Origin: Haliotis rufescens
Lineage: Eukaryota
Direction: 5' to 3'
DNA length: 64,000 bases
Assembly (NCBI RefSeq): GCF_023055435.1
Contig: NW_025963857.1
Coordinates: 12,896,001-12,960,000, forward strand
Position numbers and translations under genes: made by a program
Notes under the pieces: model-generated
Told to the model about the DNA's origin: nothing
What the model saw: only the letters and a program-made list of their open reading frames with translations
Databases searched by the model: none
Shown: positions 1 to 62,336 of the stretch, in pieces
Layout of the letters: every line of letters starts with the position of its first letter
How positions within the stretch are numbered: position 1 is the first letter of the stretch

Positions 1-1171
1 GTTGTGCTTGTATAGGTCTGAGTCGATCCAGAAAACTGTCAAATACTTCTTTTTCTTCTTCGGAAGATTTTTAAGGAACTTACCAATTTCCTGACTTAAT
101 CTTCCTGGCATGAGCCTTTTCAGGTGCCGACGGATGTTGAGCGATTTTCCTATGTAGATTGTCTTGTGTTTATAGGCAATCTTATACACACCTTTCATTG
201 GCTGTTTGTCGGGAAGCTCATAGTATGGCATGTGATTTGATTGGAGGAGCTCGCATGGTGGTACCTGAGTAGAAGGAATATAACATACAATACAAGATAC
301 AAGATGCAAACAAAGTATACAGTACTATACGCCCATGTTTGATGGTGGCTAAAATGAAACAAACATAAAATGGTTATTCGATGGCGATGTATTTGATATG
401 GATCTCATAGTTGTGTTTTTGACCTTACGTCTGCTGTGTTTTTGATGACTGTTTTAGGCCTAGTAACGTTTTGATAATGTTTGTAATTTTGTCATCAAAG
501 CCAATTTTCCAGTGTATACTTTTCTTTTGTTGGGCATTTTACATAATTTTATCTACACCTATGCACATATTTTCATCCTTATAGTCCTTGTCATGGAATC
601 ATTTAAATGATGAAGTGAAGTTAAGACTTGTCATTGTTGCTTGGCATGCTGATGGCCGAAGTATATAAACACAAGCATTACTGAACAAATTCTAAAACCT
701 ATATATTACCTCCGTAACCCTGTCTATACTTTTATATTTTGGAAGCTTCATATTCTGAGATCCATGAACTTGACTATCCTGTGTTGATTTAGCCAGGCCC
801 ACATCATTTGGGATTTTGTCTGTATTGTCTGATCCCAAATCGCTGTGCATCTTTGTACCACTGGCTGTGGTTGTATCCTGTTCAGAGTTCCAGACTGGTG
901 CATCCAATCTGTCTGGAAAATCTTTTGTTTTTCTGGGTCGACTTGGGCCAAGTATGACAGGAAGTTCATCTTCTGAAGCAATTTCGGTGTCTGTTTCAAG
1001 AATTGGAAATGACTTTTGAAGGTTTGCGATTTTCCTGAGGTCTTCATGCTGAACTGGCAGACAGCCACAATAGCCGCATGCGTGCCCCTCAGTTTGTGGT
1101 ACATAATGGGCACATTGTCCACAGCTGCAGCTACCCCGAGGAACCCCACGCTTGTCTTTGACGTAGGACAT
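1..1171 (-). CDS. Cys-finger + GIY-YIG-like protein, paralog 1 (exon 1 1171-710, exon 2 264-<1; runs off the window edge)
   Basis: Exon 1 is MSYVKDKRGVPRGSCSCGQCAHY...CGYCGCLPVQH, ending at donor GAG|GTAATA (710/709). The acceptor CTCAG| precedes 264. Manual translation of exon 2, which is not in the ORF track: VPPCELLQSNHMPYYELPDKQPMKGVYKIAYKHKTIYIGKSLNIRRHLKRLMPGRLSQEIGKFLKNLPKKKKKYLTVFWIDSDLYKHN. The join is phase 0. Confidence 0.85.
330..495. repeat. Dispersed ~165-bp repeat in the paralog 1 intron; diverged inverted copy at ~24150-24309
   Basis: CGCCCATGTTTGATGGTG...ATGGTTATTCGATGG matches the reverse complement of 24150-24309. Confidence 0.6.
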
Positions 1172-1671
1172 CAGGAAGTCTCCAGCAACCTACATTATTG
1201 CAGAACATTTAGGCAGATCAATAGTTTTTCTCTTGCCATCCCGTATGTAATCAGTTCAACTATTTGTACTTGTTATGCAACAAACTGAATTTAATGTGTT
1301 TACATGCACATTTTCTCTTAAAGGCAATAATTATTTCCTAATTCTGTGGTATAACACTGGTACTCTTAAACAATAAATGACATATATATCTGAAACATCT
1401 CAAAACTTAACCATATTCAATGTACTTGTAAGTGCCCTGATAATTGTTAATGGTTTCTACAAACAAAGACAAATCTGACCTATATCAATATGTTCTAATT
1501 ATGGTACACATAAAGATAATTAGAATTGGCTTTTCGAAAGACGCAACCAACTTTCACTGGATCAGGTGGTTTAGTGCGAACTTAGGGCTGAATATCGGCC
1601 TTTGTGCAGGTTTAGATAAATCCTTGAAAACATACATATTTCTTTAGGAACTCCGAAAGGTGACGTTTTTG

Positions 1672-2025
1672 AGGTGAGGTGAAATGGGGTTCAAAGTCGC
1701 GTCCAAGATTATTGCACTTATATAGCGACGTGCATGTACGTGTGTGTGTGTGTGTGTGGCTGCTTGTACTAGTCTGGACTGATGCCGATCAGAGTGCTAG
1801 CACACTGAGATACCATGCCGCAGTTAAACATGAATACCCCACTTAGACATAGTATACTGACTCCGAGCCGACCAGTCTATGTTTTAGCCCCTTAATGCCG
1901 AGCACCAGACAGGGTAACAACAAGTACCATCTTTTAACGTCTTTTGGTATGACGCGGGCGGGGATCGAACCCCGGACCTTCCGGTCTCCGTGCGGACTCT
2001 ATACCACCAGACCACGGAGGCGGTC
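1672..2025 (-). mobile_element. tRNA-derived SINE, family D (partial copies at ~36503-36773, ~43690-43945, ~57433-57690)
   Basis: A-box-like GTGGTCTGGTGG and B-box GGTTCGATCCC are followed by a body AAAAGATGGTACTTGTTGTTACCCTG that recurs in the window. Confidence 0.7.
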
Positions 2026-2712: not shown

Positions 2713-2732
2713 CAATGACCTGCACAGTGGTT

Positions 2733-5050: not shown

Positions 5051-6263
5051 TTATTGGATATTGCACCACCATTTAGAAGTGTTTTTTTTGGGAAGTAGTC
5101 CATTGAATTTGGGTTTGGTCCCTTGCATGTCTTCAATACACTTCATATAACTTTTCTTTGGGCAATTGTGGACGTACATTGTTTCGTCCAGGTAATACAC
5201 TGTCACCTTCTCCAGGTCCCTCTGGCTCAGACTTTTGATAAACTCGAACAAATCGGATCGACCGTGGCCGCTGAAATGACTCTTCAGTGTTTGTTTGACA
5301 TTGCAGGAACCCGAGCCCACGTAGATCGTCTGCCAGTTATAGGCGATCTTGTACACTCCTCGGACAGAATATGGGATACGGTCCAGCTCGGTGAAGGGGA
5401 TGTGGCCCTTCTGTAGGACCTTGCAGGGCTTCAGCTTCAGCAGCCCCTAGAACAGATGGACAGAATGTGACCCAAGGTTGCATCACCTATTGCGATAAAA
5501 CAAACAGGAAATTATGTTTTCATACAGGACTTTTATACAGATCCAACCATACTTGAAACTTGATACACTGTGATACCCTGGCCTGATTGTCAAGTTTGAC
5601 CCGATTACAAGTATTAATACGCGTGAGTTGCGTTTAAGGAGAGTCTGAGCTCCATATGTCAAGCTGGGCTCTGGGACTGGTAATTTATTGTCGGAGTGGG
5701 TGAAAGTGCGTGTTTTATTTTGTTTCTGTCTTTGTTTTGGAGAGGGGGGGGGGGGGGGGGGGGGGGTGTCATCTGGAAAGTGGGGGTCATGAAACATACA
5801 GTCCTATGACCATTCCCTAGGAGTTAATATCAACAATACAGTTTGAAGATCATACCTCAATCCCAAGAGAATACGTGTACGTGTCTGCGTTTTGTCCAGT
5901 CGTTGTACCCTTCAGCTTTTTCTTTGCAGGTCCGGCGCTGACATCATCCAAAGCTCGTTTCTTGGAGTCAAATAGACTTCCTAAGTCGGATGATGACCAT
6001 GACGTTGTACCCAACAGTGGGAATGATGTTGTGCCTGATACAGCCTCAGAGGATGCAGTTGGCATCCCTGAATCACTAGAGGACTCAGAGACGTCAGCGT
6101 CATCGTCAACCACATCAACAGGACTGTTCCTCATGATGATGTGGTCAATGGGAGGACATCCACATTTGGCACAGTCCGTCGTTTCATTACTGTCAGGACT
6201 GATGTAGCTGTAGCAGTTCCGACATTTGCAGCCGAATTTGGTGTGGAGTCCTGATGTTTCCAT
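5051..6263 (-). CDS. Cys-finger + GIY-YIG-like protein, paralog 2 (exon 1 6263-5856, exon 2 5446-5051; ~267 aa, ends CNIQ)
   Basis: Exon 1 contains CKCRNCYSY...CAKCGCPPIDH and ends at donor GAG|GTATGA; acceptor TTCTAG|GGG. Exon 2 reads GLLKLKPCKVLQKGHIPFTELDRIPYSVRGVYKIAYNWQTIYVG...SYMKCIEDMQGTKPKFN...WWCNIQ*. Phase 0. Confidence 0.85.
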
Positions 6264-7157: not shown

Positions 7158-8119
7158 ATGCCACGCCTTTCAAATGTGCAACGTGAACGTGCCATCGGCA
7201 TGTTGCAGACGGGAACGTCCGTAGCTGAAGTCGCAAGGATGATGGGTTGTAGTCAACGGACTGTTTATGATTTACAGACGCGTCTACAGCAAACAGGTAC
7301 CATCGCTGATCGCCCTCGGCCAGGTTGACCACGTGTGACGTCACATGCAGAGGATCGTCAGATTGTCTTACGTCACCTCCGTAACCGATTTTTGACGGCT
7401 ACATCAACCAGAATGAACTGTTTAGGGGTAGACTGAGTGCGCAAACTGTTCGAAACCGTCTGAGAACTGCTCACCTTCAAGCACGACGGCCATACTGCGG
7501 GCCGATTCTGACTCAATTACACAGACAATGTGTCAATTGTGGGCACAGCGACACTTACGATGGACTCAGAGGAATTGGAATCAAGTCGTCTTCAGTGATG
7601 AATCCCGATTTAATCTTTGATTTGCTGATGGTAGGGCGTGGGTGTGGAGACGCCGTCATGAACGTTACGCCCAGTGTTGTGTACAAGAAGTTGACAGATT
7701 TCGAGGCGGAAGTGTCATGGTGTGGGGTGCTTTCTGTGGCAATGCACGTTCCAGGCTTCCAGGTACTGGCACCAGAACTTCTGCCTTTTATGGCAGCACA
7801 TGGACCTGGTTTGATCTTCCAACACGACAATGCCAGACCCCACAAAGCAATTTTGACAAGGAATTTCCTTCAGAATGCGGGAGTCAAAGTCATGGACTGG
7901 CCGTCTCCCGACCTCAATCCCATCGAACACGTCTGGGATGCTCTTGGCAGAAGTCTGCGCACTCTCCAGAACCAACCACAGAATTTGCAAGATATTGGCA
8001 CCATTTTGCAGCAACAATGGCGTCGTCTTCCCAATCATGTGTTCACAAGCATCACAAGGTTCATGCGGAGGCGTTGTGTGGCAGTTGTCAACGCACATGG
8101 TGGCCATACCCGCTACTGA
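7158..8119 (+). mobile_element. Decayed Tc1-like transposase
   Basis: MPRLSNVQRERAIGML HTH start, FSDESRF, GGSVMVWG, FQHDNARPH, SPDLNPIEHVW, GGHTRY*; carries stops and frameshifts. Absent from duplicate copy B. Confidence 0.9.
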
Positions 8120-8171
8120 ACTTGTGTGCCATCAGATTCTCGTGCTTGGGACTTATGATTTAAACTGTTGA

Positions 8172-14854: not shown

Positions 14855-16118
14855 TTATTGGATATTGCACCACCATTTAGAAGTGTTTTTTTTGGGAAGT
14901 GGTCCATTGAATTTGGGTTTGGTCCCTTGCAAGTCTTCAATACACTTCATATAACTTTTCTTTGAGCAATTATGGTCGTACATTGTTTCGTCCAGGTAAT
15001 ACACTGTCACCTTCTCCAGGTCCTTCTGGCTCAGACTTTTGATAAACTCGAACAAATCGGATCGACCGTGGCCGCTGAAATGACTCTTCAGTGTTTGTTT
15101 GACTTTGCAGGAACTTGAGCCCACGTAGATCGTCTGCCAGTTATAGGCGATCTTGTACACTCCTCGGACATAATTTGGGATATGGTCCAGCTCGGTGAAG
15201 GGGATCTGGCCCTTCTGTAGGACCTTGCAGGGCTTCAGCTTCAGCAGCCCCTAGAACAGATGAACAGAATGTGACCAAAGGTTGCATCACCTGTTGCGAT
15301 AAAACAAACAGGATTTTGATGTCATACAGGACTTTTAATCAGATTGAGATCCAACCATACTTGAAACGTGTTGTCGTGATACACCGTGATACCCTGGCCT
15401 GATTGTCAAGTTTGACCCGATTACAAGTATTAACACGTTTCACTTTCATTGAATTGGTTATTGCTGGCGTGAGTTGCGTTTAAGGAGAGTCTGAGCTCCA
15501 TATGTCAAGCTGGGCTCTGGGACTGGTAGTTTATTATCGGGGTGGGTGAGATTGCCTGTTTAATTTTGTTTCTGTCTTTTTTTGTGGAGGAGAGGGGGTG
15601 GGGGGTGAGGGGTGGGGTGGGTGGGGTGCAGGGGTGTTACCTGGGTGGTGGGGGCATGAAACATACAGTCCTATGACCATTCACTAGGAGTTAATAATAA
15701 CAATACAGTTTGAAGATCATACCTCAATCCCAAGAGAATCCGTGCCTGCTTTTTGTCCAGTCGTTGTACCCTTAGGCTTTTTGTTTGCAGGTCCGCCACT
15801 GACATCATCCAAGGCTCGTTTCTTGGTGTCAAATAGACTTCCAAAGTCGGATGATGACCATGCCGTTGTACCCAACAGTGGGAATGATGTTATGCCTGAT
15901 ACAGCCTCAGAGGATGCAGTTGGCATCCCTGAATCACACGTGGGCTCAGAGACGTCATCGTTATCCACCTCAATAGGGCTGATCCTCATGATGGTGTGGT
16001 CAATGGGAGAACATCCACACTTAGCACAGTCCGTCGTTTCATTGCTGTCCGGACTGGTGTAGCTGTAGCAGTTCTGACATTTGCAGCCGAATTTGGTGTG
16101 GAGTCCTGATGTTTCCAT
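14855..16118 (-). CDS. Cys-finger + GIY-YIG-like protein, paralog 3 (exon 1 16118-15723, exon 2 15250-14855; ~263 aa, ends CNIQ)
   Basis: Duplicate of paralog 2 with the same splice sites and intact frames. Confidence 0.85.
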
Positions 16119-16872: not shown

Positions 16873-17019
16873 NNNNNNNNNNNNNNNNNNNNNNNNNNNN
16901 NNNNNNNNNNNNNNNNNNNNNNNNNNNNNNNNNNNNNNNNNNNNNNNNNNNNNNNNNNNNNNNNNNNNNNNNNNNNNNNNNNNNNNNNNNNNNNNNNNNN
17001 NNNNNNNNNNNNNNNNNNN
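16873..17019. other. Assembly gap
   Basis: Run of N. Confidence 1.
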
Positions 17020-23523: not shown

Positions 23524-25370
23524 TATATTGTAGATAAATGACTAATAAGTGTCCACTCTCTCTTTGTATAGTCTCCATGACGGCATATATCAACATAGGT
23601 AAAGTAGTTCACAAATATTTAGCATAACGCTTTCATAGTCCCGGAAGGTCCCGACAACTGATATATGCAGCTATCTTAGTAGGTGCATTGAGATAACGTT
23701 GATTTATCAGTCAGCACACATGTAGCAACAATATGAATATAAAAACGTATCGCTGCCGACCCAGCAACATAAAAATTACAATCAGTAATAAATCAGATCC
23801 TCTTACCTGCCGCCGATCAAGTAATGTGTCTAACGCAGGTGATATCCAGCCAAACGACTTTCAGAAACGAAGATACCGGTGTTAAGTCAGTTTTGTTACA
23901 CCTTGCAGAGGGTCCATATCAGCAAAACATCTAGTTGGGTAATCAGCCGGGCGCATGGTGTTATCTCGTATGGTGACCGAAGAACGAAAATTTGAGATCC
24001 TGTGCCAAGGATTGATAGCTAGCCAAACGTGGCTACCCTTACTTAGGCTGGGCAAACATATAGTGATATACCTTAAGCTTGGCTCTCCCTAGACTAACAC
24101 AAACTGCCGGGCAAAAGAAAGGATACACTGCAAACGTGGACTTGACCAAAACATTACAAACATCATCAAAACGTTACAAGGCTGAAACAGTCGCCGAAAT
24201 ACTGCAAACTTAAGGTCCAAAAGACACATATAATATCCGTATGAAATACATCACCATCGAATAACCATTTCTTGTTGGTTTCATTTTTATCACCATCAAA
24301 CATGGGCGCATGTTTTCATTTCCCTGCCGGCTAATGTATAAATAACGTTATGTGTAAGGTTTATATATATAATAATTCTCTAAAGGAACCCCAAGTCTCT
24401 TCATTCAAAAATTTGACGTTGTTGTTCGGGTTCCAAACAAACATATCTTTCTGCAATCTGTTTTGACTGATATGTGATATTGCCTCAATACATTTGTCAC
24501 CGAGTGACCTTCTTTGTTAAACTATGTTTGGTGTAATTGTATAGTCTACTATAGTGACGTCATATCTGTCACGTGGCTGTGCTTCTATGTCAGTCAGCCA
24601 ATCAGCCAATTGCTACCCAAATCTTACTGTACAACAGCTAAAGTCAATATGGCCCCTCCTAGTTATTCTGCGCTTAATCCCCATCGCAGATAATTGATAG
24701 TGCTTTGTTACAGGTTATTTTTATGTTTATATGATGGTATTCCGCACACCATGTACACAAAAAAACATTTGAGACGGCTCGATCCCCGCTCGCGCCATAC
24801 CTAAAGACCTTAAAAGATGGTACCTGGCTCTATTCTATAACAAAATGTTTCTTTTTATAGAGAGGTTGCATTGTTTTCACAACAAGAAGATGTCAGTACA
24901 ACTGTAACACTTTATGAGTACAACTGGACTCAAACATAAATATAGTTATCATTCTTATTTGAAGTTGTTCTCAGGGTTTATACGCCAATATATAAACTCT
25001 AAAGATGAAAAGCAAAAACTGACGCAACTGTAGGTCATTATGCAAAGCTATAGAGAAATTATATCAACCATACCATGATTTAAGTCGGAAAACAATCACT
25101 CGACTCTGTTCATTCCGGAAGTAGAATCAACTCGACCCTTTGGGGCTCGTTGATTCTATTACCGGTTTCTACAGATTCTCATGATTTGTCCATCACGGAA
25201 TCATTCGAGAAAGGACACGAGTCCCCTTTCGGCTTGTCCTGGGGTGATGTGTGTCACAAATGTATTGTCGGAGCAAGGCCATGAAATATAAAGCCACCAG
25301 AACACAAAGTCTGGAGGAGAAATACATAACTTATCGAACTTATACACCCAGACATAGGTATACATGCATG

Positions 25371-30684: not shown

Positions 30685-33600
30685 CTACTGACCATCGTTT
30701 GGAGTTACAAATGGGTTCATCATATTCAAAACTTTCGAGCCAAAGGTCTTGAGCACTGAGAATACCCCAACACCTTGCGTTGAATCTGTGCCTTTCTTAA
30801 GCAATTGTCGTGCCCTGATTTTACGTGTTTCTCCGGATGTTTTGTTTCTAACTTTTGTCTGAGAGTGTTGGATTGAAGAATATGTTTGCGTACTGGAGAC
30901 AATGGACTCACAAACCAAAGTCTTTCCAGTATGGGAGCCTCGGCCTTTGTACTGTGGATTCTTGGTTTTACAGCTTCTACCTTCACCAGGCGTTTTTGTC
31001 TGACCAAGAAAGTTTGGTGGGTTCTGCTGGGTTGGTGCAGCCTTTAACATTCTCTCCAACAGTTTGGACACATTTAGTTCTGGTTTCTGGTTTACAGCAT
31101 TAGGCGTGATCACAGACGGTTTGTTTGCAAAACTGTTATCGGAAATTGATTCGGAAGACACTGGAGTCATTTTCTTGTTCTTAGTAGGGTCATTTCCACT
31201 TGTTGTTGATACTTTCTGTTCTTGATCTGAATAGACATTGCCCCTCGTTCTCTTCTCAGGCTGCATAAGCTCATATCGAGGTGTTATTTTTGTGTGTTGA
31301 GAATGTGCAGAACCGACAGTGTGTTTCTGGCCCTTCTCTGCAGAGGATGGTTCGAAACAAGGGGATCCTGTCTGTGAATGTTTCCCTAGAACCGTTGAGT
31401 GATCTCTTAATGTCTCTTTACTGGGAGATTTACATTTTCTTCTGATGCTCTGTCGTTGTAGCTTCTTTGGGGAATATTTATTTACCTGTATTGTGGTAGG
31501 ACAGGCAGGTTGGTACTCTTTAGTGACAGTTGAAAGTGTCGCATCTACTCTTTTATCTTTTCTAATGATGTTCGTTGGTACAGCATGTCCAGTCACTTTC
31601 CACATATTATCATTTTCGGTCCTGGCTTCAAATTCTGGTGACCGGGGAGAAATACCTAACTGCTGAAGCACATCATGGGTTGTCTGATTTTCATGAAAGT
31701 TTTGAAGGTTCATTGACTTATCTTCAGAAGCTCGTATTGGTTGAGATCTTTGTCCGGATGAGACGGCCAAGGCTGGTATTGTAGAAACATTGCTCAGTGA
31801 CATCTCAGTTATTTTCATATTCAAGTTCATTACTGTACTCGGCACTGTGGCTGAAGAAGATAAGGTTGTTTGACGTCGACAGATGGGAATGTCCTTGGGA
31901 CTCTTTGTCGGAAGATGCCTTGACAGTTGTCCATGTTGATCATACTTTATTTTCTTTGCATCTGTATGAAACTGTGATTTCTCTCCATCATCACAGGCAG
32001 GTCTCTTTCTCGGCATCAAGCTGAATGTAGGTGCACTATGATCATCTAATGGGCTATATCTGTCAGCATCTTCAATATGATGGCTAGGTAGGATAGATAC
32101 ATGCTGTGATTGTTCTCTATCATCTTTTGAAGTTTTGGAATCATTATTGATAACTGTCACGCCGGCATTTGTCATCGAGCAGAGAATCGGTTGTATGTCG
32201 TTAAGCATTGGTTTCTTTCCCTGCAGGTCTTTGATACATTCCAGGTAGGACCTTCCACAGTGATGGACATGTATGCTCTCATTAAGCCAGAACACTGACA
32301 CCATCTCAAGTTCCTCCTTGGTAAGATTCAGCAAGAACTTTACTATCTCCTGCTTGCCATCACCACTGAACTGTTTCCGAAGCTCCTTGATGATATTGCT
32401 TGTTGGCGAACTGACATAGACAGTTTCCCACTTGTAGGCTATCTTGTACACACCACTTGGCCTGCGCGTCGTCCGCACGATGACTGAGTATGGTACATGA
32501 CCTCTGTGCAACAGCTTGCATGGTTTCATCTGGAATAAAAAGCAGTATTTTGGTAACACCTCAATACAAGTCAGTAAGCCAGCCAGTAAAACATTATGAG
32601 TGAGTGGGTGAGTTTGGTTCAACACCGATTTGAACAGTATTCCTGTCTTATCACGGCGTGTCAGTTTGACATGGGAGGAAAGCCCGAAGTGATGCAGGTC
32701 TTGGATGTTTACGAATTTGACAATCCTAGAAACATAATCAGGAGAATCTAGATTCAAACCCACGATCATAGTTTTCTGGCACGCTTAAGGAATTTCAGCG
32801 CCTTAGGCGACTATGACATAGACAAGCGGCACATTGTTGGTGTTCATGACGAGTTGATGACGAAATGAAATCAATGGGAAATTAACTAATATTGTTCATG
32901 AAACATTCCTATTACTTCTTGGGGCACGGGTGGCCTAGTCGTCTAAGGCGCCGCGATTCGCTGTGCAGCAGAGTTGCGTCCATTGGGCACGCCAGAAACC
33001 TATGATTGTGGGTTCGAATCCCGGTTCGCCCCGATTATGTTTCTAGGTTTGTCATCACCATTCCCGAGCTTGTGGGTTTCTCCGAAGTGGTAAACGTCTG
33101 AGTCCTGCATCACTTCGGGCTTTCCTCCCACATTAAGCCGAGACGCCGCGATATAACTGTCACTCAACTCACTCACTCAGTCACTCCTATTACTTCGTTA
33201 CGCCGAAGGCCCGGTTCGATTCCCCATATGGGTCCAATGTGTGAATCCCATTTCCGTTGTTCCCCGTCGTGATATATTGCTGGAATATTGCTAAAAGTGG
33301 CGTAAAGCCATACCACTTCATTCATTAAAACTACTTACGGCAATCAAGGGTATCGACATGCGGACTGTTTTTGGCACCATAGCCTGTTTGTCTTGTTTTC
33401 TATTCAATGGCCGCTCTGTCTTCGAAGATCTCTCTGTGTCCATATCTTGTCCTTTATTAATGCACGGTGTCTGGAAGTCCTTTAAACGTTCACACTCTTG
33501 TTTGGTATTTGTTTCAGGTTGCGACGTAACGTCATCAGAAGCACTAGCTTTCAGCCCCAGTGCTGTCTCAGCAGTTCCCTGTTCGTCCTGGCAATGCAAT

Positions 33601-36824: not shown

Positions 36825-37199
36825 GCACTAAATGGCTCATACAAAATTGCCGAGAATGGTCGGACAATATATGTGGTCAATGCCAAAATTGCATCAATCA
36901 GAAGAGCACTGAGGAAACATTTCAAAGGAATAGACAAACAACACATAGGAACATATCTAAGCATCCTACACGAAGCATACAAAGAGGAATTTATAACAGT
37001 GTTTTGGCTTGATATTAACATTAAACATGCCTGTAATTGTAGCTACCTTAAGTGTTTTGAAAGAATGGAAGGAAGAAAGCCACTGTACAACATGCAGGGC
37101 CATGCCTTCATCGCGCGACCAAAGCGAGTCGGTTCTTGTTCTGAATCTGGCCCAGATGATCACAAAATGGATACTCATGAAATCGAAAAATCGGAGTAA
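36825..37199 (+). pseudogene. 5'-deleted GIY-YIG-like paralog 5 (exon 2 remnant only)
   Basis: Nearly identical to ~46192-46566 but joined directly to sequence homologous to ~44340. Exon 1 and the acceptor are missing, and YVG has become YVV. Confidence 0.8.
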
Positions 37200-38039: not shown

Positions 38040-39182
38040 ATGGCAAAGTTCACGGACTTCAACCGAGACAAGTACGGAGTTGTTCGGGGTAGGTGTCGAG
38101 ACTGCCCCGAGGACTGTCCTCAGTATTCCCTACCTGTCCTCAGACACAACTGTACATATTGCGGGTGTCCGGCGGGTCAGCATGAGAGGGTGGAACCTCG
38201 ACCTGAACTCATCATCAAGATTGAACCAGGGGAGGAGGGGGCAGGATCTCCGGGGCGGCCTGTTGGAAGATCACAACCTGGTCTGTCGAGAAAACAGGAC
38301 GGGCTGCCTACAGCTCAAGCCCAACCTCGTTCCTCCAGGCGAAATAAGACGCCAATTGTTTCACGAAAACATCCGGATACATCGGGAGCAGTAACCCAGG
38401 TATAATTTCAGTTTAATTAGTTCTTGAGCTTTTGAATGTTTTTAGAAGTTCTTTGTTATTCTTGATTATCTTCGTTTCATCTAACCTTATGGCTACTACT
38501 GTGTGACCACAAGTGATCGAGGGCAAACGTTATTAATTTATGTTTAATCTCAGCTGCAAACGAGGCTTTGAACATAGCACATATTTACGTCGGTTATTTG
38601 TTGTCATACTAAATGGTGTTTTCCCCAAACCCCTCCACCACAAGATATTTAGTAGTTGGTCTCTTAGACATTAGATGCTGAGTATTTATACTTAGGTTTG
38701 TGCAATTAAATATTGAGTTTGGTTGATTAAACGAATTTTCATAACTAACCTTTTTAAATTTTACTTGTATATTTCAGAAACGTTGTGAGACGTTATTTGA
38801 GGATACTGGCGTCAATGTTTCTCTTCTTAAAAGAAACCTTAGAAAAACACAACGTGGCGTGTTCACAATCCTATGGAAGGGATATATAATTTATGTTGGT
38901 GAGCCAAAGAAAACGCCCATATTATCAAGCCTCCGTAGTATCTTTGCTGGTAGAAGCAACCAAGACATCAGCACATTTTTGAAAAGTCTACCCAAAGATT
39001 TGAAAAAGAAGCACATCAGATTCGCCTGGCTGAAACGCATGGATGACGACCCACATCGCCAAACTTGTGGCAAAGGCAAGAAAAAGGTGGTCTCGTACCG
39101 ACAGTGTATTTCAAAACTGCAAGGGAAGACTCCAAAGGATATCCTCAGGTATTACATGAGTGGACAAAACATCAGGCGATAG
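38040..39182 (+). CDS. Cys-finger + GIY-YIG-like protein, paralog 6 (exon 1 38040-38399, exon 2 38778-39182; ~254 aa)
   Basis: TTTCAG|ACATGG; CRDCPEDCPQY...CTYCGCPAGQH; donor CAG|GTATAA; acceptor TTTCAG|AAA. Exon 2 reads KRCETLF...RGVFTILWKGYIIYVG...SYRQCISKLQGKTP. Phase 0. Confidence 0.85.
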
Positions 39183-44357: not shown

Positions 44358-44500
44358 NNNNNNNNNNNNNNNNNNNNNNNNNNNNNNNNNNNNNNNNNNN
44401 NNNNNNNNNNNNNNNNNNNNNNNNNNNNNNNNNNNNNNNNNNNNNNNNNNNNNNNNNNNNNNNNNNNNNNNNNNNNNNNNNNNNNNNNNNNNNNNNNNNN
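44358..44500. other. Assembly gap
   Basis: Run of N; the equivalent U3 region (~58090-58185) holds a (GT)n tract. Confidence 1.
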
Positions 44501-45282
44501 TTTTGAAACACTAGTAGGGTGACCTCACCTCGAAGCCACTTGCATTGCTCTGTGTTACCCCAAAACAGACATTGAATAAACTTTGACAATGCAGGGGAGG
44601 CAACTCTGAGTTGGCGTCTGAAGCGAATTTCCTAAAAATCGGTGGCATGTTGTTGTTTAACGCTGCACTCAGCAACGATTGTGAACTGTGGTTTGCTCAC
44701 TTATTTCATAATTCGGGATCCGTCTCCGAATTGTATTACACATCAGTGCAAGGGAAGCATGTCTGTTTTGTGCAGTTTTTCACGGACAAGATTCAGTTCG
44801 ACCCCAAACGAGTTAGCGACCGGTCATTATATATTTTTTTCAAAGCGATTGGTGATTTTAAGTGTCATACGGTTGGAATTTTCCGAGGTAAGAGTCTGAC
44901 GCGATTCCCCCTTTTTCATTCAGTCCTCAAAGAAGACGATTACATTTGGACAGTCATTCATACAGGTAATGATAAACCTATTTTGTTTCATTCAAATACC
45001 ACTGATATTGTTACTGTTTATTATTATCATCATTATTATAATTGTTGTTGTTGCTGTTGCTATTGTTATTATAATACAGGCCAGTATATGCTACAGTCTC
45101 AAAGTTACATTGAATATTTCAAAGATGCAGTTTTGTGACCGATGAATACAGCGATCTTTAAATGTTGGCTTGTGAAGGTGTATGTCCAATGTCTCTGTTT
45201 TCAATTGATTTTTTTAATTGATTGCAAGGTGTAATTATGAGATTGTTCATGTGTTCATATCCATAGACGCAATTCGTCGACG

Positions 45283-46566
45283 ATGTCATTCATCGGGCGA
45301 GGAGGATGTCGCCACTGTGGATGTAGAGAATATGTGAAGCCACCAGAGGGAGAGAAATGTTACCACTGCAACCACGAGATGGACCTTCACGTCGTCAAAT
45401 ATCAACCACAACCAACTGGTGGGACACCAACCAGCAAGACCGGTGAATCATCTGTTCAGAACACAATGGATGCTGCCACGGTGGATGTTAGTCTGATGCA
45501 CACGGGAGAGGCGTTTGAACAAGGAGCCCCTGACGTATGTTTCGAAGAGACGTGGGAAGTCCGCGCACCGTCTGACTTGGCGCATGGAGATTTCGTCAAG
45601 CCCCATGATAGAGGTGCAGTCATCACAAAGCGAGTATCACCAATGACAGGAAAGGATGGAAATATCGGATCTAGTGAAGGTAATAGTCACTCTACTGCAG
45701 CACCAAGATCAATAGATGCGAAGCCAGACAAAGAACAGTTAAGTTCAGTTCTTAAACGAACAGCGTCTGAGATCAGTACCACAAAGAGGACACCGATAAA
45801 GGCATCCAATGTGTTCGTAGCTCCAGCACCTTACAATGGACCGGTATGTATTGGTACTTTGTAATAGATGTTTTTATGACATATCATACAAAAGCTATAA
45901 AGCTTCGACGTGTGATGATAATCTTTGAAGATGATGATCATGGTGTTGGTGGTGGATATATGATGTTTGATGATGATGAAGATGATGAAAAAAATACTAT
46001 TTTGTTTCGGAATACTTTTTTGAGGACCTTTCAAGTGATGAGTCCTTAATTCGGAGCCAACACTGTGAATCATCTTGCCCAGTCACCAAAACATGTCTTG
46101 GTCATAAACACAGTGTTTGCTTTGTTTGTAGAAACCATCTTGCTGGCGTCTTAGAATGAGCCATCTTGCCTACGGAACTGAACCCTCAGAAGCACTAAAT
46201 GGCTCATACAAAATTGCCGAGAATGGTCGGACAATCTATGTGGGCAATGCCGAAAGTGCATCAATCAGAAGAGCACTGAGGAGACATTTCAAAGGAATGG
46301 ACAAACAACACATTGGAGCATATCTAAGCACCCTACACGAAGAATACAAAGAGGAATTTATAACAGTGTTTTGGCTTGATATTACCATCAAACATGCCTG
46401 TAATTGTAGCTACCTTAAGTGTTTTGAAAGAATGGAAGGAAGAAAGCCACTGTACAACATGCAGGGCCATGCCTTCATCGCGCGACCAAAGCGAGTCGGT
46501 TCTTGTTCTGAATCTGGCCCAGATGATCACAAAATGGATACTCATGAAATCGAAAAATCGGAGTAA
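45283..46566 (+). CDS. Cys-finger + GIY-YIG-like protein, paralog 7 (exon 1 45283-45843, exon 2 46132-46566; ~331 aa)
   Basis: GRGGCRHCGCREY...CYHCNHEMDLH; donor CCG|GTATGT; acceptor TTGTAG|AAA. Exon 2 reads KPSCWRLRMSH...GSYKIAENGRTIYVG...HACNCSYLKCFERMEGRKPLYN. Confidence 0.85.
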
Positions 46567-47609: not shown

Positions 47610-48641
47610 ATGGCAATTTTCACGGACATCAACCGAGACAAGTACGGAGTTGTTCGGGGTAGGTGTCGAGACTGCCCCGAGGACTGTCCTCAGTATTCCC
47701 TACCTGTCCTCAGACACAACTGTACATATTGCGGGTGTCCGGCGGGTCATCATGAGAGGGTGGAACCTCGACCTGAACTCATCATCAAGATGGAACCAGG
47801 GGAGGAGGGGGCAGGATCTCCGGGGCGGAGTGATGACCGACCACCACCCGGTCCGTCGAGAAGAGCCCAGCCAAGTACCCCCAGGCGAAATGAGTCGCCC
47901 ACTGGCTCACGAAATCACCAGGATACATCACGCACAGTAATCCAGGTATCATTTCAACCCGTTAACTTAGAAAGTTTTAGAAGTTAGTTTGTCATTCGTG
48001 AGGTTTCATTTTAATGTAACCTTTCCTATATGGCTTATATTGTGTAAGCATCAGTGATGGATGGAGGACATGATTTACTAACGTTTGATCTTAGCTGCGA
48101 CCGAGGCTTTGAACATAAGCACGTGCATACGTACGTTATTTGTTGTTACACCACAAACCTATGGAATGGGGGATGAAATTGACTTGATTGAACAGGTTTC
48201 TATCAGCTGCACTTTTAATATTTAACTTGTATGTTTCAGAAACGTTGTAAGACGTTATTTGAGGATGCTGGCGTCACATATTCTTATCTTCAAGAGAAAC
48301 TTACAAAAACTCAACGCGGCGTGTTTACAATCCTATGGAAGGGAAAAATAATTTATGTTGGGGAGCCAAAGAAGACGCCCCTATTAACTAACCTTCGTAG
48401 TATCTTTACTGGTGGAAGCACTCAAGATATCGGCAAATGTTTGAAAAGTTTACCCAACGATTTGAAAGAGAAGCATGTCCGAATCGCTTGGCTGACACAC
48501 ATGGATGACGACCCACACTGCCAAACGTGCAGAGAAGGCAAGAAAACGCTGCTTTCGTATCGACAGTGTGTTTCAAAACTGCAAAGCAAGAATCCAAGGG
48601 AGGTCCTCTTGGATCTCAAGACAAAATTTTCACGCCATTAG
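47610..48641 (+). CDS. Cys-finger + GIY-YIG-like protein, paralog 8 (exon 1 47610-47945, exon 2 48240-48641; ~245 aa)
   Basis: Same architecture as paralog 6; donor CAG|GTATCA, acceptor TTTCAG|AAA; intact frames. Confidence 0.85.
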
Positions 48642-51865: not shown

Positions 51866-52907
51866 TTAATGCAAGGTTATGTTTTTTACTAAATCTGAAA
51901 CAATTTCGGTTTGCAACAGATAAAGGACTCCTGTAAGTTCAAATGGTTTAATTTGCCATACTGACTTCAGAAAATGCGTGATTTCATAAAAAAAACCATG
52001 AACATGCACGATGCAAGCAACACATCTTCGTCTCATGGAATGGACCAGGCGTCGCACAAAGTCCTGTGGGATATCTGTCCATATCTGCTGGAGCATGTTT
52101 CGAAGTTCCTGGAGTGTCTGTGGAACACGTGGTTGACGTCGAAGGCGCCGATCCATCTCATCCAACATGTGCTCGGTTGGTGAGAGATCAGGGGAGCGAG
52201 CTGGCCAGGGGATGACATTCGCGTTGTTTTTGTTGAAGAGAATCCTGAACAAGTCGAGCAATTGAGGCCGGGCGTTGTCATGTTGAAAGGTAATGCCTGA
52301 GCCATGACGACGCAAAAACGATAGAACAACAGGGCCGAAGATCTGGTCGCAGTAGCACCGTCCATTGAGATTTCCCTCTACCACTATCAAACGGGTCCTC
52401 TGTCTTGCTGTAATCACACCCCATACCATAACTCTGCCGCCCCCGAACCGATCTTCTTCCATGCCACAATGATTGACGTAACGTTCACCTCGACGTCGGT
52501 ACACTCGAATCCGTCCATCGCTGTGGCTGAGGGGAAAACGAGACTCGTCAGTGAATAGAACTTGTCCCCACTGAATGGCCGTCCAGCGTAGACGCTGTCT
52601 GCACCACTGTAGACGAGCTTGAAAGATATTCTTCGAAGGCCAGGGATGCTTCTTGCAGTCACTGTTGCTGGCTGGAATCGATTTCGTAGGTGTGTTGTTC
52701 GAATCCAGTTGTCTGTCGATTATTGGTTACGCGTGGCCTGCCACTCCGAGGATGGTCTCTGACTACATTCGTCTGTTGCCAACGTTGCCATAAACACCAA
52801 ATGGTGTTTCTGTGGATGTTAAATTGTCTTACAACATCACGTTGACTCGATCCTGCTTCAAGCATACCAATGGCTCGCAGACGCTCATTTTGGGACAGGC
52901 GTGGCAT
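51866..52907 (-). mobile_element. Decayed Tc1-like transposase
   Basis: MPRLSQNERLRAIGML, RSGRPRVT, GGGRVMVWG, FQHDNARP, WPARSPDLSPTEH, SMRRRC; frameshifted. Confidence 0.9.
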
Positions 52908-54290: not shown

Positions 54291-54293
<3 letters not shown>

Positions 54294-57843: not shown

Positions 57844-57867
57844 AACGAAAGTGAAAATAGATTTCCC
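57844..57867 (+). promoter_or_regulatory. IRF-element/ISRE-like motif (U3 copy)
   Basis: AACGAAAGTGAAAATAGATTTCCC. Confidence 0.4.
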
Positions 57868-58095: not shown

Positions 58096-58137
<42 letters not shown>

Positions 58138-58958
58138 TGAACATGTCCTGTTATGTGTTTTCTTCTCTACATGACACTGTATACTTTTGAAACACTAGTA
58201 GGGTGACCTCATCTCGAAGCCACTTGCATTGCTCTGTGTTACCCCAAAACAGACATTGAATAAACTTTGACAATGCAGGGGAGGCAACTCTGAGTTGGCG
58301 TCTGAAGCGAATTTCCTAAAAATCGGTGGCATGTTGTTGTTTAACGCTGCACTCAGCAACGATTGTGAACTGTGGTTTGCTCACTTATTTCATAATTCGG
58401 GATCCGTCTCCGAATTGTATTACACATCAGTGCAAGGGAAGCATGTCTGTTTTGTGCAGTTTTTCACGGACAAGATTCAGTTCGACCCCAAACGAGTTAG
58501 CGACCGGTCATTATATATTTTTTTCAAAGCGATTGGTGATTTTAAGTGTCATACGGTTGGAATTTTCCGAGGTAAGAGTCTGACGCGATTCCCCCTTTTT
58601 CATTCAGTCCTCAAAGAAGACGATTACATTTGGACAGTCATTCATACAGGTAATGATAAACCTATTTTGTTTCATTCAAATACCACTGATATTGTTACTG
58701 TTTATTATTATCATCATTATTATAATTGTTGTTGTTGCTGTTGCTATTGTTATTATAATACAGGCCAGTATATGCTACAGTCTCAAAGTTACATTGAATA
58801 TTTCAAAGATGCAGTTTTGTGACCGATGAATACAGCGATCTTTAAATGTTGGCTTGTGAAGGTGTATGTCCAATGTCTCTGCTTTCAATTGTTTTTTTTA
58901 CTTGATTGCAAGGTGTAATTATGAGATTGTTCATATCCATAGACGCAATTTGTCGACG

Positions 58959-60243
58959 ATGTCATTCATCGGGCGAGGAGGATGTCGCCACTGTGGATGT
59001 AGAGAATACGTGAAGCCACCAGAGGGAGAGAAATGTTACCACTGCAACCACGAGATGGACCTTCACGTCGTCAAATATCAACCACAACCAACTGTTGGGA
59101 CACCAACCAGCAAGACCGGTGAATCATCTGTTCAGAACACAATGGATGCTGCCACGGTGGATGTTAGTCTGATGCACACGGGAGAGGCGTTTGAACAAGG
59201 AGCCCCTGACGTATGTTTCGAAGAGACGTGGGAAGTCCGCGCACCGTCTGACTTGGCGCATGGAGATTTCGTCAAGCCCCATGATAGAGGTGCAGTCATC
59301 ACAAAGCGAGTATCACCAATGACAGGAAAGGATGGAGATATCGGATCTAGTGAAGGTAAAAGTCATTCTACTGCAGCACCAAGATCAATAGATGCGAAGC
59401 CAGACAAAGAACAGTTAAGTCCAGTTCCTAAACGAACAGCGTCTGAGATCAGTACCCCAAAGAGGACACCGATAAAGGCATCCAATGTGTTCGTAGCTCC
59501 AGCACCTTACAATGGACCGGTATGTATTGGTACTTTGTAATAGATGTTTTTATGACATATCATACAAAAGCTATAAAGCTTCGACGTGTGATGATAAACT
59601 TTGAAGATGATGATCATGGTGTTGGTGGTGGATATATGATGTTTGATGATGATGAAGATGATGAAAAAAATACTATTTTTTTTCGGAATACTTTTTTGAA
59701 GACCTTTCAAGTTGATGAGTCCTTAATTCGGAGCCAACACTGTGAATCATCTTGCCCAGTCACCCAAACATGTCTTGGTCATAAACACAGTGTTTGCTTT
59801 GTTTGTAGAAACCATCTTGCTGGCGTCTTAGAATGAGCCATCTTGCCTACGGAACTGAACCCTCAGAAGCACTAAATGGCTCATACAAAATTGCCGAGAA
59901 TGGTCGGACAATCTATGTGGGCAATGCCGAAAGTGCATCAATCAGAAGAGCACTGAGGAGACATTTCAAAGGAATGGACAAACAACACATTGGAGCATAT
60001 CTAAGCACCCTACACGAAGAATACAAAGAGGAATTTATAACAGTGTTTTGGCTTGATATTACCATCAAACATGCCTGTAATTGCAGCTACCTTAAGTGTT
60101 TTGAAAGAATGGAAGGAAGAAAGCCAATGTACAACATGCAGGGCCATGCCTTCATCGCGCGACCAAAGCGAGTCGGTTCTTGTTCTGAATCTGGCCCAGA
60201 TGATCACAAAATGGATACTCATGAAATCAAAAAATCGGAGTAA
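58959..60243 (+). CDS. Cys-finger + GIY-YIG-like protein, paralog 9 (exon 1 58959-59519, exon 2 59809-60243; ~331 aa)
   Basis: Near-identical to paralog 7, with the same splice sites. Confidence 0.85.
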
Positions 60244-61269
60244 AGGATACTTTGCGAACATTTTGAATTTGAAACGGGCAAATGTATTCTCATTTGCATA
60301 AGTTGTGGTTAAATTACTGTTTCTTTGTCTCACCTATTATTTTCATATGACTTGGTTGAGCTGAATAAAGATATCGTCAAAAGGAAGATTAACTTCGTTA
60401 TTATTGTGGTCATATATTTGACATGGCATCAAAAGGGTTGTCGTCACGTTTACTGACATTTTTGGTTATTAATATAGCCAGTCAGCTTATCAGAGTGAGT
60501 GAGTGAATTGAGTTAAACGTCGCTTTTAGCAATATCACGGCGATTGACACCAGAAATAGGCTCCACACATTGTACCCATGTGGGGAATCGAACAAAGAGC
60601 TTCAACGTGACGAGCGAACGACAGACCATTTGTATTGGTTTAAAAGACAGGTTATTGTTTTGGTCACTTATTATTATATAAAAAATATCCTGTCTCGAAC
60701 ACTTACGAAAGGTGAGGGATAAGGGTGTTATATTGTGTAACATTGGTGATTTCGTCATGGCAGTCATATTGTGTGATTCATTATGCATGCTGTTGTCCAT
60801 TAGTTTGTCTTGACCTGGCATGATTGGGAACGGGGCGGTCGGGTAGCCTAGTGGTTAAAGCGTTCGCTCGTCACGCCGAAGACCCGGGTTCGATTCCCGA
60901 CATGGGAAGAATGTACGAAGCCCATTTCTGGTGTCCCCCGCCGTGATATTGCTGGAATATTGCTAAAAGCGGCGTAAAGCCATACTCACTCACTCACTCA
61001 TTCATGATTGGGAACAGGCCACAGGCAGTTATCGCCATAACATTGCTGACTGGTTGAAACAGCATTTTACTCGGTTACATTTCTAAATGACAATATTGTT
61101 TGTGGTAAATTTAAGTATTAATGTTATTTGTTGTTCAAAGCTGCATTCAGCCCAGTTATAGTCCAGCTACATGATGGCGGCTTTTTTAAAACTGTTTTTT
61201 TTCTGTACGATTCCGAGTCGAGCTGTCTAACAAATAGCAAAACCTATTGTATTTGTTCACGTTTCAGAC

Positions 61270-62336
61270 ATGGCAATGTTCACGGACATCAACCGAGACA
61301 AGAGAGGAGTTGTTCGGGGTAGGTGTCGAGACTGCCCCGAGGAATGTTCTCAGTATTCCCAGCCTGTCCTCAGACACAACTGTACATATTGCGGGTGTCC
61401 GGCGGCTCATCATGAGAGGGTGGAACCTCGACCTGAACTCATCATCAAGATAGAACCAGGGAAGGAGGGGGCAGGATCTCCGGGGCGGAGTGATGACCGA
61501 CCACCACGCCGTCCGTCGAGAAGACCGGACGGGTGGTCCAAGGCCCAAGTCCAGCCAAGTACCTCCAGGCGAAATGAGTCGCCCACTGATTCACGACATC
61601 ACCAGTATACATCACGTACAGTAATCCAGGTATTATTTCAACCCGTTAACTTAGCTCTTTAGCTTTAGAAAGTTTTAGAAGTTAGTTTGTCATTCGTGAG
61701 GTTTCATTTTAATGTAACCTTTCCTATATGGCTTATATTGTGTAAGCATCAGTGATGGATGGAGAACATGATTAACTAACGTTTGATCTTAGCTGCGACC
61801 GAGGCTTTGAACATAAGCACGTGCATACGTACGTTATTTGTTGTTACACCACAAACCTATGGAATGGGGGATGAAATTGACTTGATTGAACAGGTTTCTA
61901 TCAGCTGCACTTTTAATATTTAACTTTAATGTTTCAGAAACGTTGTAAGACGTTATTTGTGGATGCTGGCGTCACATATTCTCATCTTCAAGAGAAACTT
62001 ACAAAAACTCAACGCGGCGTGTTCACAATTAAGTGGGAGGGAAAAATAATTTATGTTGGGGAGCCAAAAAAGACGCCCCTATTAACTAACCTTCGTGGTA
62101 TCTTTACTGGTGGAAGCCAACAAGACATCAGCAAGTATTTGAAAAGTTTATCCAACGATTTGAAAGAGAAGCATGTCCGAATCGCTTGGCTGACACACGT
62201 GGATGACGACCCACACTGCAAAACGTGCAGAGAAGGCAAGAGAAAGCTTTCGTATCGACATTGTGTTTCAAATCTGCAAAGCAAGGATCCAAGGAAGGTC
62301 CTCTTGGATCTCAAGAGAAATTTTTCACTCCATTAG
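61270..62336 (+). CDS. Cys-finger + GIY-YIG-like protein, paralog 10 (exon 1 61270-61629, exon 2 61938-62336; ~252 aa)
   Basis: Same architecture as paralogs 6 and 8; intact frames and GT-AG sites. Confidence 0.85.

What the first reader, a model, noticed from the sequence alone, without database searches (positions are those of the whole stretch)
1..62336. All copies appear to have lost the catalytic Arg, with different substitutions per subtype: candidate pseudo-nucleases
Established: active GIY-YIG enzymes have an invariant Arg in helix 1 (e.g. YVGKAxNLxxR), plus a metal-binding Glu and a terminal Asn. Seen by manual alignment, the Arg position is H in paralog 1 (NIRRHL), T in 2/3 (VKQTL), E in 4 (IIKEL), A in 5/7/9 (IRRAL), S in 6 (ILSSL) and N in 8/10 (LLTNL). 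Paralogs 6/8/10 also have GVF for GIY and lack the terminal Asn, and paralog 4 has YVS. No conserved Glu is visible at the expected place, whereas H-x(1-3)-C...SYxxC is conserved. The frames are still open. Inference: the domain has been repurposed as a nucleic-acid or protein binder, sensor or decoy, possibly with a new Zn site.
Basis: partly seen in the sequence, partly recalled or inferred. Interest (0 to 1): 0.78.

Follow-up and report, generated by a model that had tools for sequence, protein, structure and literature searches.

The report
Abalone array of dead GIY-YIG nucleases
Red abalone carries a tandem array of about fifty expressed genes whose nuclease-like domain keeps its shape but has lost the residues needed to cut DNA, so it probably now binds rather than cuts.

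Summary
The window is Haliotis rufescens DNA.

- **Whole cluster:** 49 copies lie on C79 between 12.88 and 13.27 Mb. 0 of 49 keep the Arg.
- **Canonical relatives:** five small paralogs elsewhere in the same genome keep Tyr, Tyr, Arg, His, Glu and Asn. Mollusc and metagenome relatives pass Pfam GIY-YIG.
- **Fold:** AF2 models of types A and B are confident. Their top 17 structural matches are all GIY-YIG-fold proteins.
- **Expression and constraint:** spliced contigs exist. Across species the domain is more conserved than the linkers.
- **Cys pair:** the "new Zn site" Cys are ancestral, not new.
- **Private features:** an N-terminal Cys finger is found only in Haliotis. Type C ends in a CaaX box. 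A and B neighbours form chimeric isoforms.

Verdict: a real, undescribed GIY-YIG pseudo-nuclease family. Its function is inferred, not shown.

The parts
1..237 (-). p1 (type E) exon 2, degenerate GIY-YIG domain, cut by the window start. In the genome the frame runs on for 785 aa (L037).
   Evidence: Arg column H, Glu column G, Asn column S
692..1171 (-). p1 exon 1 ORF: Cys finger (1016-1171) plus linker
5051..5446 (-). p2 (type C) exon 2: domain, ending in CaaX box CNIQ
   Evidence: Arg column T, Glu column K; TAG acceptor at 5447-5449
5856..6263 (-). p2 exon 1: finger, acidic and Ser-rich linker, KKR...KKKLK NLS-like stretch
   Evidence: GAG|GTATGA donor; junction matches gene model P0002
14855..15250 (-). 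p3 (type C) exon 2, CaaX CNIQ
15717..16118 (-). p3 exon 1 ORF (finger plus linker)
30685..32529 (-). p4 (type D): domain (32200-32529) continuous with a long low-complexity tail; no finger exon found
   Evidence: Arg column E, His column Q, Glu column G
36825..37199 (+). p5 (type A relic): exon 2 with its start cut off by stops, no finger exon; one of 11 such relics in the cluster
38040..38405 (+). p6 (type B) exon 1 ORF (finger plus linker)
38745..39182 (+). p6 exon 2 (stop-to-stop frame)
   Evidence: GVF, Arg column S, Glu column K
45283..45843 (+). p7 (type A) exon 1; end placed by homology with p9 (no indels)
46132..46566 (+). p7 exon 2; the domain that was folded
   Evidence: Arg column A, Glu column gap
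47610..47987 (+). p8 (type B) exon 1 ORF
48219..48641 (+). p8 exon 2 (stop-to-stop frame)
   Evidence: GVF, Arg column N, Glu kept
58959..59519 (+). p9 (type A) exon 1; internal alternative donor near 59355 used by the chimeric A-B isoform
59809..60243 (+). p9 exon 2
   Evidence: contigs of X3, X10 and X12 join 59518|59808; GT..AG intron 59520-59808
61268..61629 (+). p10 (type B) exon 1; start codon at 61270, upstream acceptor at 61268
61938..62336 (+). p10 exon 2
   Evidence: joint 61626>61935 (cut +3), GT..AG, in X1, X3 and X12
16873..17019 (.). assembly gap, outside all exons
44358..44500 (.). assembly gap, outside all exons

Best explanation
The window holds part of a Haliotis-specific tandem array of genes. 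Their C-terminal exon encodes a GIY-YIG-fold domain that can no longer catalyse phosphodiester cleavage. The Arg that defines the superfamily is replaced in every copy. The metal-binding Glu is gone in most copies, and the His, the Asn and the first Tyr are lost in various subtypes.

The family arose by duplication of a small, catalytically intact mollusc GIY-YIG gene that still sits elsewhere in the same genome. It then gained a private N-terminal Cys/His finger and disordered linkers or tails.

Shown:
- fold and descent;
- loss of the catalytic residues;
- splicing;
- long-term conservation of the domain relative to the linkers.

Inferred: the dead domain works as a non-cutting binding module for nucleic acid or for a partner such as an active paralog. 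The finger would anchor it. NLS-like basic stretches would take it to the nucleus. In type C a CaaX box would add a farnesyl membrane anchor.
For: Homology.
- The profile of the ten copies finds only 41 proteins in 1.84 billion representatives.
- 7 of 10 of the small relatives tested pass Pfam GIY-YIG or GIY_YIG_2 gathering scores.
- The best PDB sequence match is UvrC-N, with its Arg aligned to the variable column.

Fold.
- The AF2 type A domain has pLDDT 85.3, with residues 1-110 above 90.
- In the type B model the domain is above 90 outside one insertion.
- In both models the top 17 VIA rows are GIY-YIG folds, Z 4.0-7.1 and 3.8-6.8. The next rows drop to 2.8 and 2.2.

Census.
- Arg 0 of 49; Glu 13 of 49; His 20 of 49; Asn 30 of 49; first Tyr 32 of 49.
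- 5 of 6 non-cluster copies keep all six residues.
- Arg, His, Glu and Asn are invariant in 23 canonical relatives.

Literature (passages read).
- The superfamily is defined by GIY, YIG, a central Arg and a C-terminal Glu (PMC1564403).
- I-BmoI R27A is catalytically inactive yet still footprints DNA (PMC3664794).

Expression. Spliced contigs were laid from 4 runs of 4 studies.

Constraint.
- The type E paralog pair has dN/dS 0.10, with 37 of 79 changes nonsynonymous against 0.80 expected, p=5e-11.
- The domain is 70-81% identical between species against 55-64% for linkers and tails, in 4 of 4 types.

Charge. The domains are basic, pI 8.6-10.4.
Against: - No activity or binding data exist.
- I could not read model coordinates. 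In types A and E an Arg at i-1 and another at i+3 on the same helix could partly replace the lost Arg.
- 13 type B copies keep the Glu.
- Recent paralogs show dN/dS of about 0.7-2.2, not different from 1. In type B the exons diverge about as fast as the introns. Many young copies may therefore be drifting.
- Foldseek alone gave no match at E <= 0.001.
- VIA Z values of 6-7 are in the range the tool calls middling.
- The runs laid are only guessed to be RNA, and contigs show presence, not level.
- The nuclear, nucleic-acid-binding role rests on motifs read by eye.
Confidence: 0.72

Rival explanations
1. The proteins are still nucleases. Catalytic residues have migrated: Arg at i-1 or i+3 in types A and E, the retained Glu in type B, or another metal ligand.
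For: - IRRAL-RRH in type A and IRRHL-KR in type E place Arg next to the lost position.
- Both Tyr, the His and the Asn are kept in type A.
- 13 of 49 copies keep the Glu.
- The abstract of PMC10211241 notes that some pseudoenzymes have migrated catalytic residues (listing).
Against: - No copy has both an Arg at the catalytic column and the Glu.
- Types C, D and B have no Arg on the active face.
- Type B has also lost the first Tyr and the His, and its Glu sits in a loop with pLDDT of about 54.
- The column varies freely (A, N, E, S, T, H, Q), as expected for a released site.
Confidence: 0.1
2. The array is mostly drifting, functionless DNA. It would be a recently amplified segmental duplication whose copies are transcribed but under no selection.
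For: - Recent pairs have dN/dS not different from 1.
- Type B exons diverge about as fast as introns.
- There are 11 truncated type A relics and 2 type D copies with an in-frame stop.
Against: - Orthologous subtypes persist in four Haliotis species.
- The domain is more conserved than the linkers in 4 of 4 comparisons, and the finger is 64-89% identical.
- The type E pair has dN/dS 0.10.
- Between p6 and p10 the finger differs by 6.7% against 30% for the intron.
- 36 of 38 non-relic copies have open frames.
Confidence: 0.12
3. The genes belong to a mobile element or virus: a Penelope-like element endonuclease, a homing endonuclease, or a viral insertion.
For: - GIY-YIG domains are common in such elements (PMC8557442 passages).
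- Tc1/mariner remnants lie in the window.
Against: - All 49 copies sit in one 390-kb array. Only 6 other places match in 1.33 Gb.
- There are no Cys between GIY and YIG, the mark of Penelope-like endonucleases.
- The genes have a two-exon structure with GT..AG introns.
- A viral-contig scan with one canonical relative found nothing.
- I did not search the flanks for a reverse transcriptase.
Confidence: 0.03

Closest known systems
Small canonical mollusc GIY-YIG proteins (NCBI names them 'uvrABC system protein C-like' in Haliotis cracherodii XP_071088857 and 'GIY-YIG domain-containing protein' in Tegillarca granosa)
   Same: - The same domain with the same three or four conserved Cys and the same N-terminal helix.
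- Profile E-values down to 1e-16.
- Present in the same genome: L031-L034.
   Different: - They are about 115-150 aa and stand alone, with no finger.
- They keep Tyr, Tyr, Arg, His, Glu and Asn.
- The array copies lose these residues and gain a finger, linkers, tails or a CaaX box.
UvrC N-terminal domain, I-TevI, T4 EndoII, R.Eco29kI (solved GIY-YIG nucleases)
   Same: The same fold. Against the type A model: Z 7.1 EndoII, 6.5 Eco29kI, 6.0 UvrC (83 of 89 residues), 5.4 I-TevI.
   Different: - 13-20% identity.
- All of these carry the Arg and Glu that the abalone copies lack.
- Their partner domains differ.
SLX1 and ANKLE1/LEM-3 (eukaryotic GIY-YIG nucleases with extra domains)
   Same: A GIY-YIG domain joined to a zinc finger or another tethering module, in a nuclear protein. 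Their architectures are recalled, apart from the COG3680/LEM passage read in PMC1564403.
   Different: - Neither appeared in any search here.
- The finger is N-terminal and private to Haliotis.
- SLX1 and ANKLE1 are active enzymes.
Fungal Ssd1-type pseudonucleases of the Dis3/RNase II family (PMC8097288; abstract seen)
   Same: Loss of nuclease catalytic residues with the fold kept, and a shift to binding.
   Different: An unrelated fold, single-copy genes, and an RNA-binding role that has been shown. For the abalone family the role has not been shown.

Membership tests
GIY-YIG nuclease superfamily | Compact fold of about 100 aa: three-stranded sheet flanked by helices (beta-beta-alpha-alpha-beta-alpha) | tested here: met
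   AF2 types A and B. The top 17 VIA rows are all GIY-YIG folds in both models.
GIY-YIG nuclease superfamily | GIY and YIG motifs with their Tyr | tested here: met
   YIG Tyr in 49 of 49 copies. GIY Tyr in 32 of 49, Phe in the 17 type B copies.
GIY-YIG nuclease superfamily | Central Arg on helix 1 (PMC1564403) | tested here: not met
   0 of 49 cluster copies: A17, N13, E11, S4, T2, H1, Q1. The column was fixed.
GIY-YIG nuclease superfamily | C-terminal metal-binding Glu | tested here: not met
   13 of 49 copies, all type B, in a low-confidence loop. The others read gap 17, G12, K6, R1.
GIY-YIG nuclease superfamily | Terminal Asn (not universal: absent in Slx1, Asp in COG1833; PMC1564403) | tested here: inconclusive
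   30 of 49 keep it. The feature does not define the superfamily.
GIY-YIG nuclease superfamily | Nuclease activity | not testable with these tools
   Needs a cleavage assay.
Pfam PF01541 GIY-YIG / PF20815 GIY_YIG_2 | Score at or above the gathering cut-off | tested here: not met
   0 of 9 window exon-2 ORFs pass (best 16.1 against 22.4). 0 of 10 database proteins pass: 8 of the array and 2 of the related C112-type locus. 7 of 10 canonical relatives pass.
Penelope-like element endonuclease | CCHH motif with two Cys between GIY and YIG (PMC8557442 passages) | tested here: not met
   No Cys between the motifs in any copy.
Pseudoenzyme (a protein that lacks conserved catalytic motifs by sequence; PMC10211241 abstract) | Fold of an enzyme family with the catalytic residues missing | tested here: met
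Testin/LMCD1 or ZF-HD type Cys-rich finger (for the N-terminal domain) | Sequence or fold match to those domains | tested here: inconclusive
   - Atlas structure leads only: ZF-HD_dimer TM 0.69, LMCD1 0.61, testin-like 0.58 over about 40 residues.
- Pfam finds nothing.
- PDB sequences give only zinc-ribbon or ZZ hits at E >= 0.12.
- AF2 pLDDT for the finger is 44-66.

The most novel reading that the evidence does not exclude
The array is an abalone-private, fast-turning-over system of nuclease-dead GIY-YIG 'readers'. The active site was dismantled independently in several lineages: type B lost the Arg but kept the Glu, a related locus on C112 kept the Arg but lost the Glu, and types A, C, D and E lost both. 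Paired A/B loci splice into isoforms that carry one or two private zinc fingers. Type C is a farnesylated, NLS-bearing form, perhaps at the nuclear envelope. Gene conversion shuffles variants among copies. The system would act as a sensor, decoy or dominant-negative partner, either against invading nucleic acids or for the intact paralogous nuclease.
Probability: 0.2. Interest if true: 0.8.

Novelty: new variant of a known kind. Interest (0 to 1): 0.62.

Why it matters
In the held library I found no paper that treats a GIY-YIG domain as a pseudoenzyme. 0 of the 9 papers that use 'pseudoenzyme' or 'pseudonuclease' together with another search term hold 'GIY-YIG'. The 2 papers that mention both GIY-YIG and Haliotis are about other things.

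This genome offers a natural experiment. It holds intact small GIY-YIG genes next to about fifty derived copies that lost the active site in different ways. These derived copies are expressed and are conserved across four abalone species.

That makes several questions directly testable:
- what a GIY-YIG fold does once it stops cutting;
- whether dead copies regulate live ones;
- why abalone amplified them.

The family also shows why Pfam thresholds miss it.

Tried and rejected
- **Penelope-like endonuclease origin:** rejected. No Cys lie between GIY and YIG.
- **Mobile element:** rejected on distribution. There is one array plus six other places in the genome.
- **'New Zn site':** rejected. 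The Cys are ancestral.
- **dN/dS among recent paralogs as a test of constraint:** set aside. Type B copies are mosaics, with 0-30% divergence patchwise within single pairs. This points to gene conversion, and the counts are small.
- **Exons diverging faster than the intron in p8 against p10:** this looked like positive selection. It did not hold across the other pairs.
- **Origin of the canonical relatives:** left open.
  - Single-protein scans of metagenome contigs (P0011) and viral contigs (P0010) found nothing.
- **N-terminal finger:** Pfam, PDB sequences, Atlas features (all under 0.9) and AF2 (low pLDDT) gave no firm family.
- **Literature searches:** one search was badly framed and none of the 15 listed papers holds GIY-YIG, so it says nothing. 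(LMCD1) was seen as a listing only and not used.
- **Active-site geometry:** not checked, because model coordinates cannot be read.
- **Supplements:** none were opened. The supplementary alignments of PMC8557442 could bear on the comparison with Penelope-like endonucleases.

Full report
**What the window is.** The profile of the ten copies matches the window's own assembly at G000:C79:12896001-12960000, in a genome of 1.33 Gb. Identical gene models are named 'uncharacterized protein LOC124127963 [Haliotis rufescens]' on a contig of 32,824,957 bp, the length of C79. So this is red abalone DNA. GC content is 0.37-0.46.

**The observation.** ORF listing and translation recover all ten paralogs. 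Eight have an upstream exon with a Cys-rich motif, C-x2-C-x1-3-C-x2-Y-x9-11-C-x2-C-x6-H. I call the subtypes A (p5, p7, p9), B (p6, p8, p10), C (p2, p3), D (p4) and E (p1). The two assembly gaps lie 755 and 783 bp upstream of the start codons of p3 and p7 and touch no exon.

**Is it a GIY-YIG domain?** The abalone proteins alone do not show it.
- 0 of 9 window ORFs reach a Pfam cut-off. The best is GIY_YIG_2 at 16.1 bits against 22.4.
- 0 of 10 database proteins reach one either: 8 of the array and 2 of the related C112-type locus.

The link runs through relatives.
- A profile of the ten copies, scored against 1.84 billion representatives, gives 41 proteins at E <= 0.001, 14 at <= 1e-10 and 7 at <= 1e-30.
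- I set five aside as repeat proteins with several short matches (P0018, P0027, P0030, P0031, P0034).
- Nine are abalone array proteins.
- One more (P0029, with its isoform P0057) is a longer H. asinina protein whose H. rufescens counterpart lies on C112.
- The rest are small proteins of about 90-170 aa.
- 7 of the 10 small ones I scanned pass Pfam GIY-YIG or GIY_YIG_2 gathering scores. P0011, P0014 and P0016 do not.
- Named examples are 'uvrABC system protein C-like' of H. cracherodii, a GIY-YIG domain protein of the clam Tegillarca granosa, and an H. rubra protein.
- The best PDB sequence match of the profile is UvrC-N 1yd6 (E 0.11). It is weak but ranks first, and it aligns UvrC's Arg to the variable column.

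**Fold.**
- AF2 on p7 exon 2, with 45 aligned sequences, gives mean pLDDT 85.3 and pTM 0.74. Residues 1-110 are above 90, with the order helix, two strands, three helices, strand, helix.
- Foldseek against PDB has no hit at E <= 0.001. Its first 15 listed rows (ranks 1-16) are all GIY-YIG nucleases: T4 EndoII at E 0.013, UvrC-N, Eco29kI and Hpy188I. I-TevI is at rank 42.
- VIA-align on 887 chains gives 17 top entries that are all GIY-YIG folds: EndoII Z 7.1 over 94 residues, Eco29kI 6.5, UvrC-N 6.0 over 83 of 89, I-TevI 5.4. The next row falls to Z 2.8. That 2lwf, the plant Grx N-domain, has a GIY-YIG fold is recalled.
- A model of the type B protein P0006 (H. asinina) has its domain above pLDDT 90, except for the insertion at 211-222 (about 54). 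It gives the same 17 families on top (Z 3.8-6.8), then 2.2.
- The tool warns that Z under 8 can be a common arrangement. Here the clean step down and the agreement with the sequence chain make the assignment firm.

**Catalytic residues.** PMC1564403 defines the superfamily by GIY, YIG, a central Arg and a C-terminal Glu. It notes that the Asn is not universal (passages).
- In 23 canonical relatives Arg, His, Glu and Asn are invariant.
- I took all 55 matching places of the genome (the remaining DNA was fetched) and aligned them to the family profile.
- The 49 copies of the array span C79 12.88-13.27 Mb. Two type D copies are split by a stop.

| Column | Counts among the 49 array copies |
|---|---|
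| Arg | R 0; A17, N13, E11, S4, T2, H1, Q1 |
| Glu | E 13; gap 17, G12, K6, R1 |
| His | H 20 |
| Asn | N 30 |
| GIY Tyr | Y 32; F 17 |
| YIG Tyr | Y 49 |

- The 13 copies that keep the Glu are all type B and include p8 and p10.
- Of the six places outside the array, five keep all six residues. The sixth, on C112, keeps the Arg but not the Glu.
- No copy has both the Arg and the Glu.

**Descent.** An IQ-TREE tree of 47 domains puts the array plus the C112-type locus on one side of a branch (support 90/86) and all canonical proteins on the other. I left out p1, p5, p9, P0017, P0023, P0040 and P0041 as partial or duplicate rows. Type B is sister to a group (97/91) that holds A, C, D, E and the C112-type locus. 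Type B keeps the Glu and the C112-type locus keeps the Arg. The simplest reading is that their common ancestor had both, and that the active site was lost more than once. This is inference from a short domain with a midpoint root.

**The Cys.** The H-x-C...SYxxC Cys pair and a Cys in the N-terminal helix are present in the canonical relatives too. They are an old structural feature of this mollusc subfamily, not a new site. I could not tell a Zn site from disulfides.

**Expression.** Contigs of four runs from four studies, under four organism labels, were laid on 58800-62400. The runs are only guessed to be RNA.
- Records of X3, X10 and X12 join 59518 to 59808.
- Records of X1, X3 and X12 join 61626 to 61935, with GT..AG ends.
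- The sequence gives GT..AG introns at 59520-59808 and 61630-61937, in frame with gene models P0001 and P0006.
- Contigs show presence, not level.

**Constraint.** The picture is mixed.
- Recent paralogs have NG86 dN/dS of 0.66-0.90 (A), 0.67-2.2 (B) and 1.43 (C, 13 changes). None differs from 1.
- Type D gives 0.09-0.43 on a few changes.
- The older B split gives 0.44-0.71 (40 of 61 nonsynonymous, p=0.018; another pair p=0.21).
- The type E pair gives 0.10 at a saturated dS of 1.6 (37 of 79, p=5e-11).
- Type B copies are mosaics, and their exons diverge about as fast as their introns.
- Between species the domain is 70-81% identical against 55-64% for linkers and tails, in 4 of 4 types. The finger is 64-89% identical.
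- Between p6 and p10 the finger differs by 6.7%, exon 2 by 23% and the intron by 30%.

So the domain is kept over the long term, while young copies may drift or diversify.

**Architecture.**
- The finger profile hits 27 places in the genome, all inside the array.
- A search of 5.8 billion proteins with the finger of P0006 finds 12 proteins, all from Haliotis.
- Type D has no finger. Types D and E carry tails of 500-1000 aa.
- Eleven type A copies, p5 among them, are relics without a finger exon.
- P0071 (H. rufescens) and P0070 (H. asinina) are chimeric models: part of A exon 1 joined to B exons 1 and 2. The window has the fitting donor (GAAG|GTAAAA near 59355) and acceptor (TTTCAG|AC at 61268). 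Contigs start at 61265-61268 with unplaced letters in front.
- Types C end in CNIQ, CNVQ or CSIM.

**How it most likely works.** The I-BmoI paper calls R27A catalytically inactive yet uses it for DNA footprints. It also says the domain itself binds DNA weakly and needs an anchor (passages). By analogy the abalone domain would be a non-cutting binding module tethered by its finger. Its basic charge (pI 8.6-10.4) and NLS-like stretches would fit a nuclear role. None of this was tested.

**Novelty.** Searches of the held library found no paper on an abalone GIY-YIG family and none joining GIY-YIG with pseudoenzyme or pseudonuclease. I file it as a new variant of a known kind.

Noticed in passing
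window 5051-5065 and 14855-14869 (- strand ends of p2 and p3): Type C proteins end in a CaaX box (CNIQ). It is kept in H. asinina P0002 (CNVQ) and in P0003 (CSIM). Upstream lie basic residues and a KKR...KKKLK NLS-like stretch in exon 1. The combination of NLS plus CaaX recalls lamins (recalled).
   Followed up: partly
window about 59355 (donor) and 61268 (acceptor); proteins P0071, P0070: Neighbouring A and B genes are joined in predicted 385-aa isoforms of two species: finger A plus finger B plus domain B. Fitting splice signals are in the window, and contigs begin at the acceptor.
   Followed up: partly
window 36825-37199 and 10 further places on C79: Eleven type A exon-2 relics lack a finger exon. 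Stops cut off the first helix, yet each still sits next to a type B gene.
   Followed up: partly
loci L003-L021 (type B copies): Divergence between copies is patchy along the gene. One example shows 0% in a flank next to 4-5% in the exons. In another, the 3' flank is 30% diverged in two copies. This is the pattern expected from gene conversion or recombination among copies.
   Followed up: partly
window 25201-28221: A minisatellite of about 3 kb with a 30-base unit. It reads as long open frames on both strands (for example VDAPETTHMS repeated, 594 aa).
   Followed up: no
window 60494-61098 (and the matching stretch after p7): A short repeat between p9 and p10 with summed contig depth of 1e5-1e6 in all four runs laid, and many rearranged joints. 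It is probably a very abundant interspersed repeat.
   Followed up: no
window 7595-8171 and 51866-52504: ORFs that look like remnants of Tc1/mariner-type transposases. This was read by eye and not searched.
   Followed up: no
window 44611-45138 and 58295-58822: An identical 175-aa ORF lies upstream of both p7 and p9. Its function is unknown. It is part of the duplicated block of about 13.7 kb.
   Followed up: no
L035 (G000:C112:17815936-17816367); P0029 and P0057: A separate long protein (720-771 aa in H. asinina) carries a related domain that keeps the Arg but has lost the Glu, the His and the Asn.
   Followed up: partly
P0014, P0019 (canonical relatives): Some canonical small relatives start with a hydrophobic, signal-peptide-like stretch. 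If these are secreted, the conserved Cys could be disulfides.
   Followed up: no
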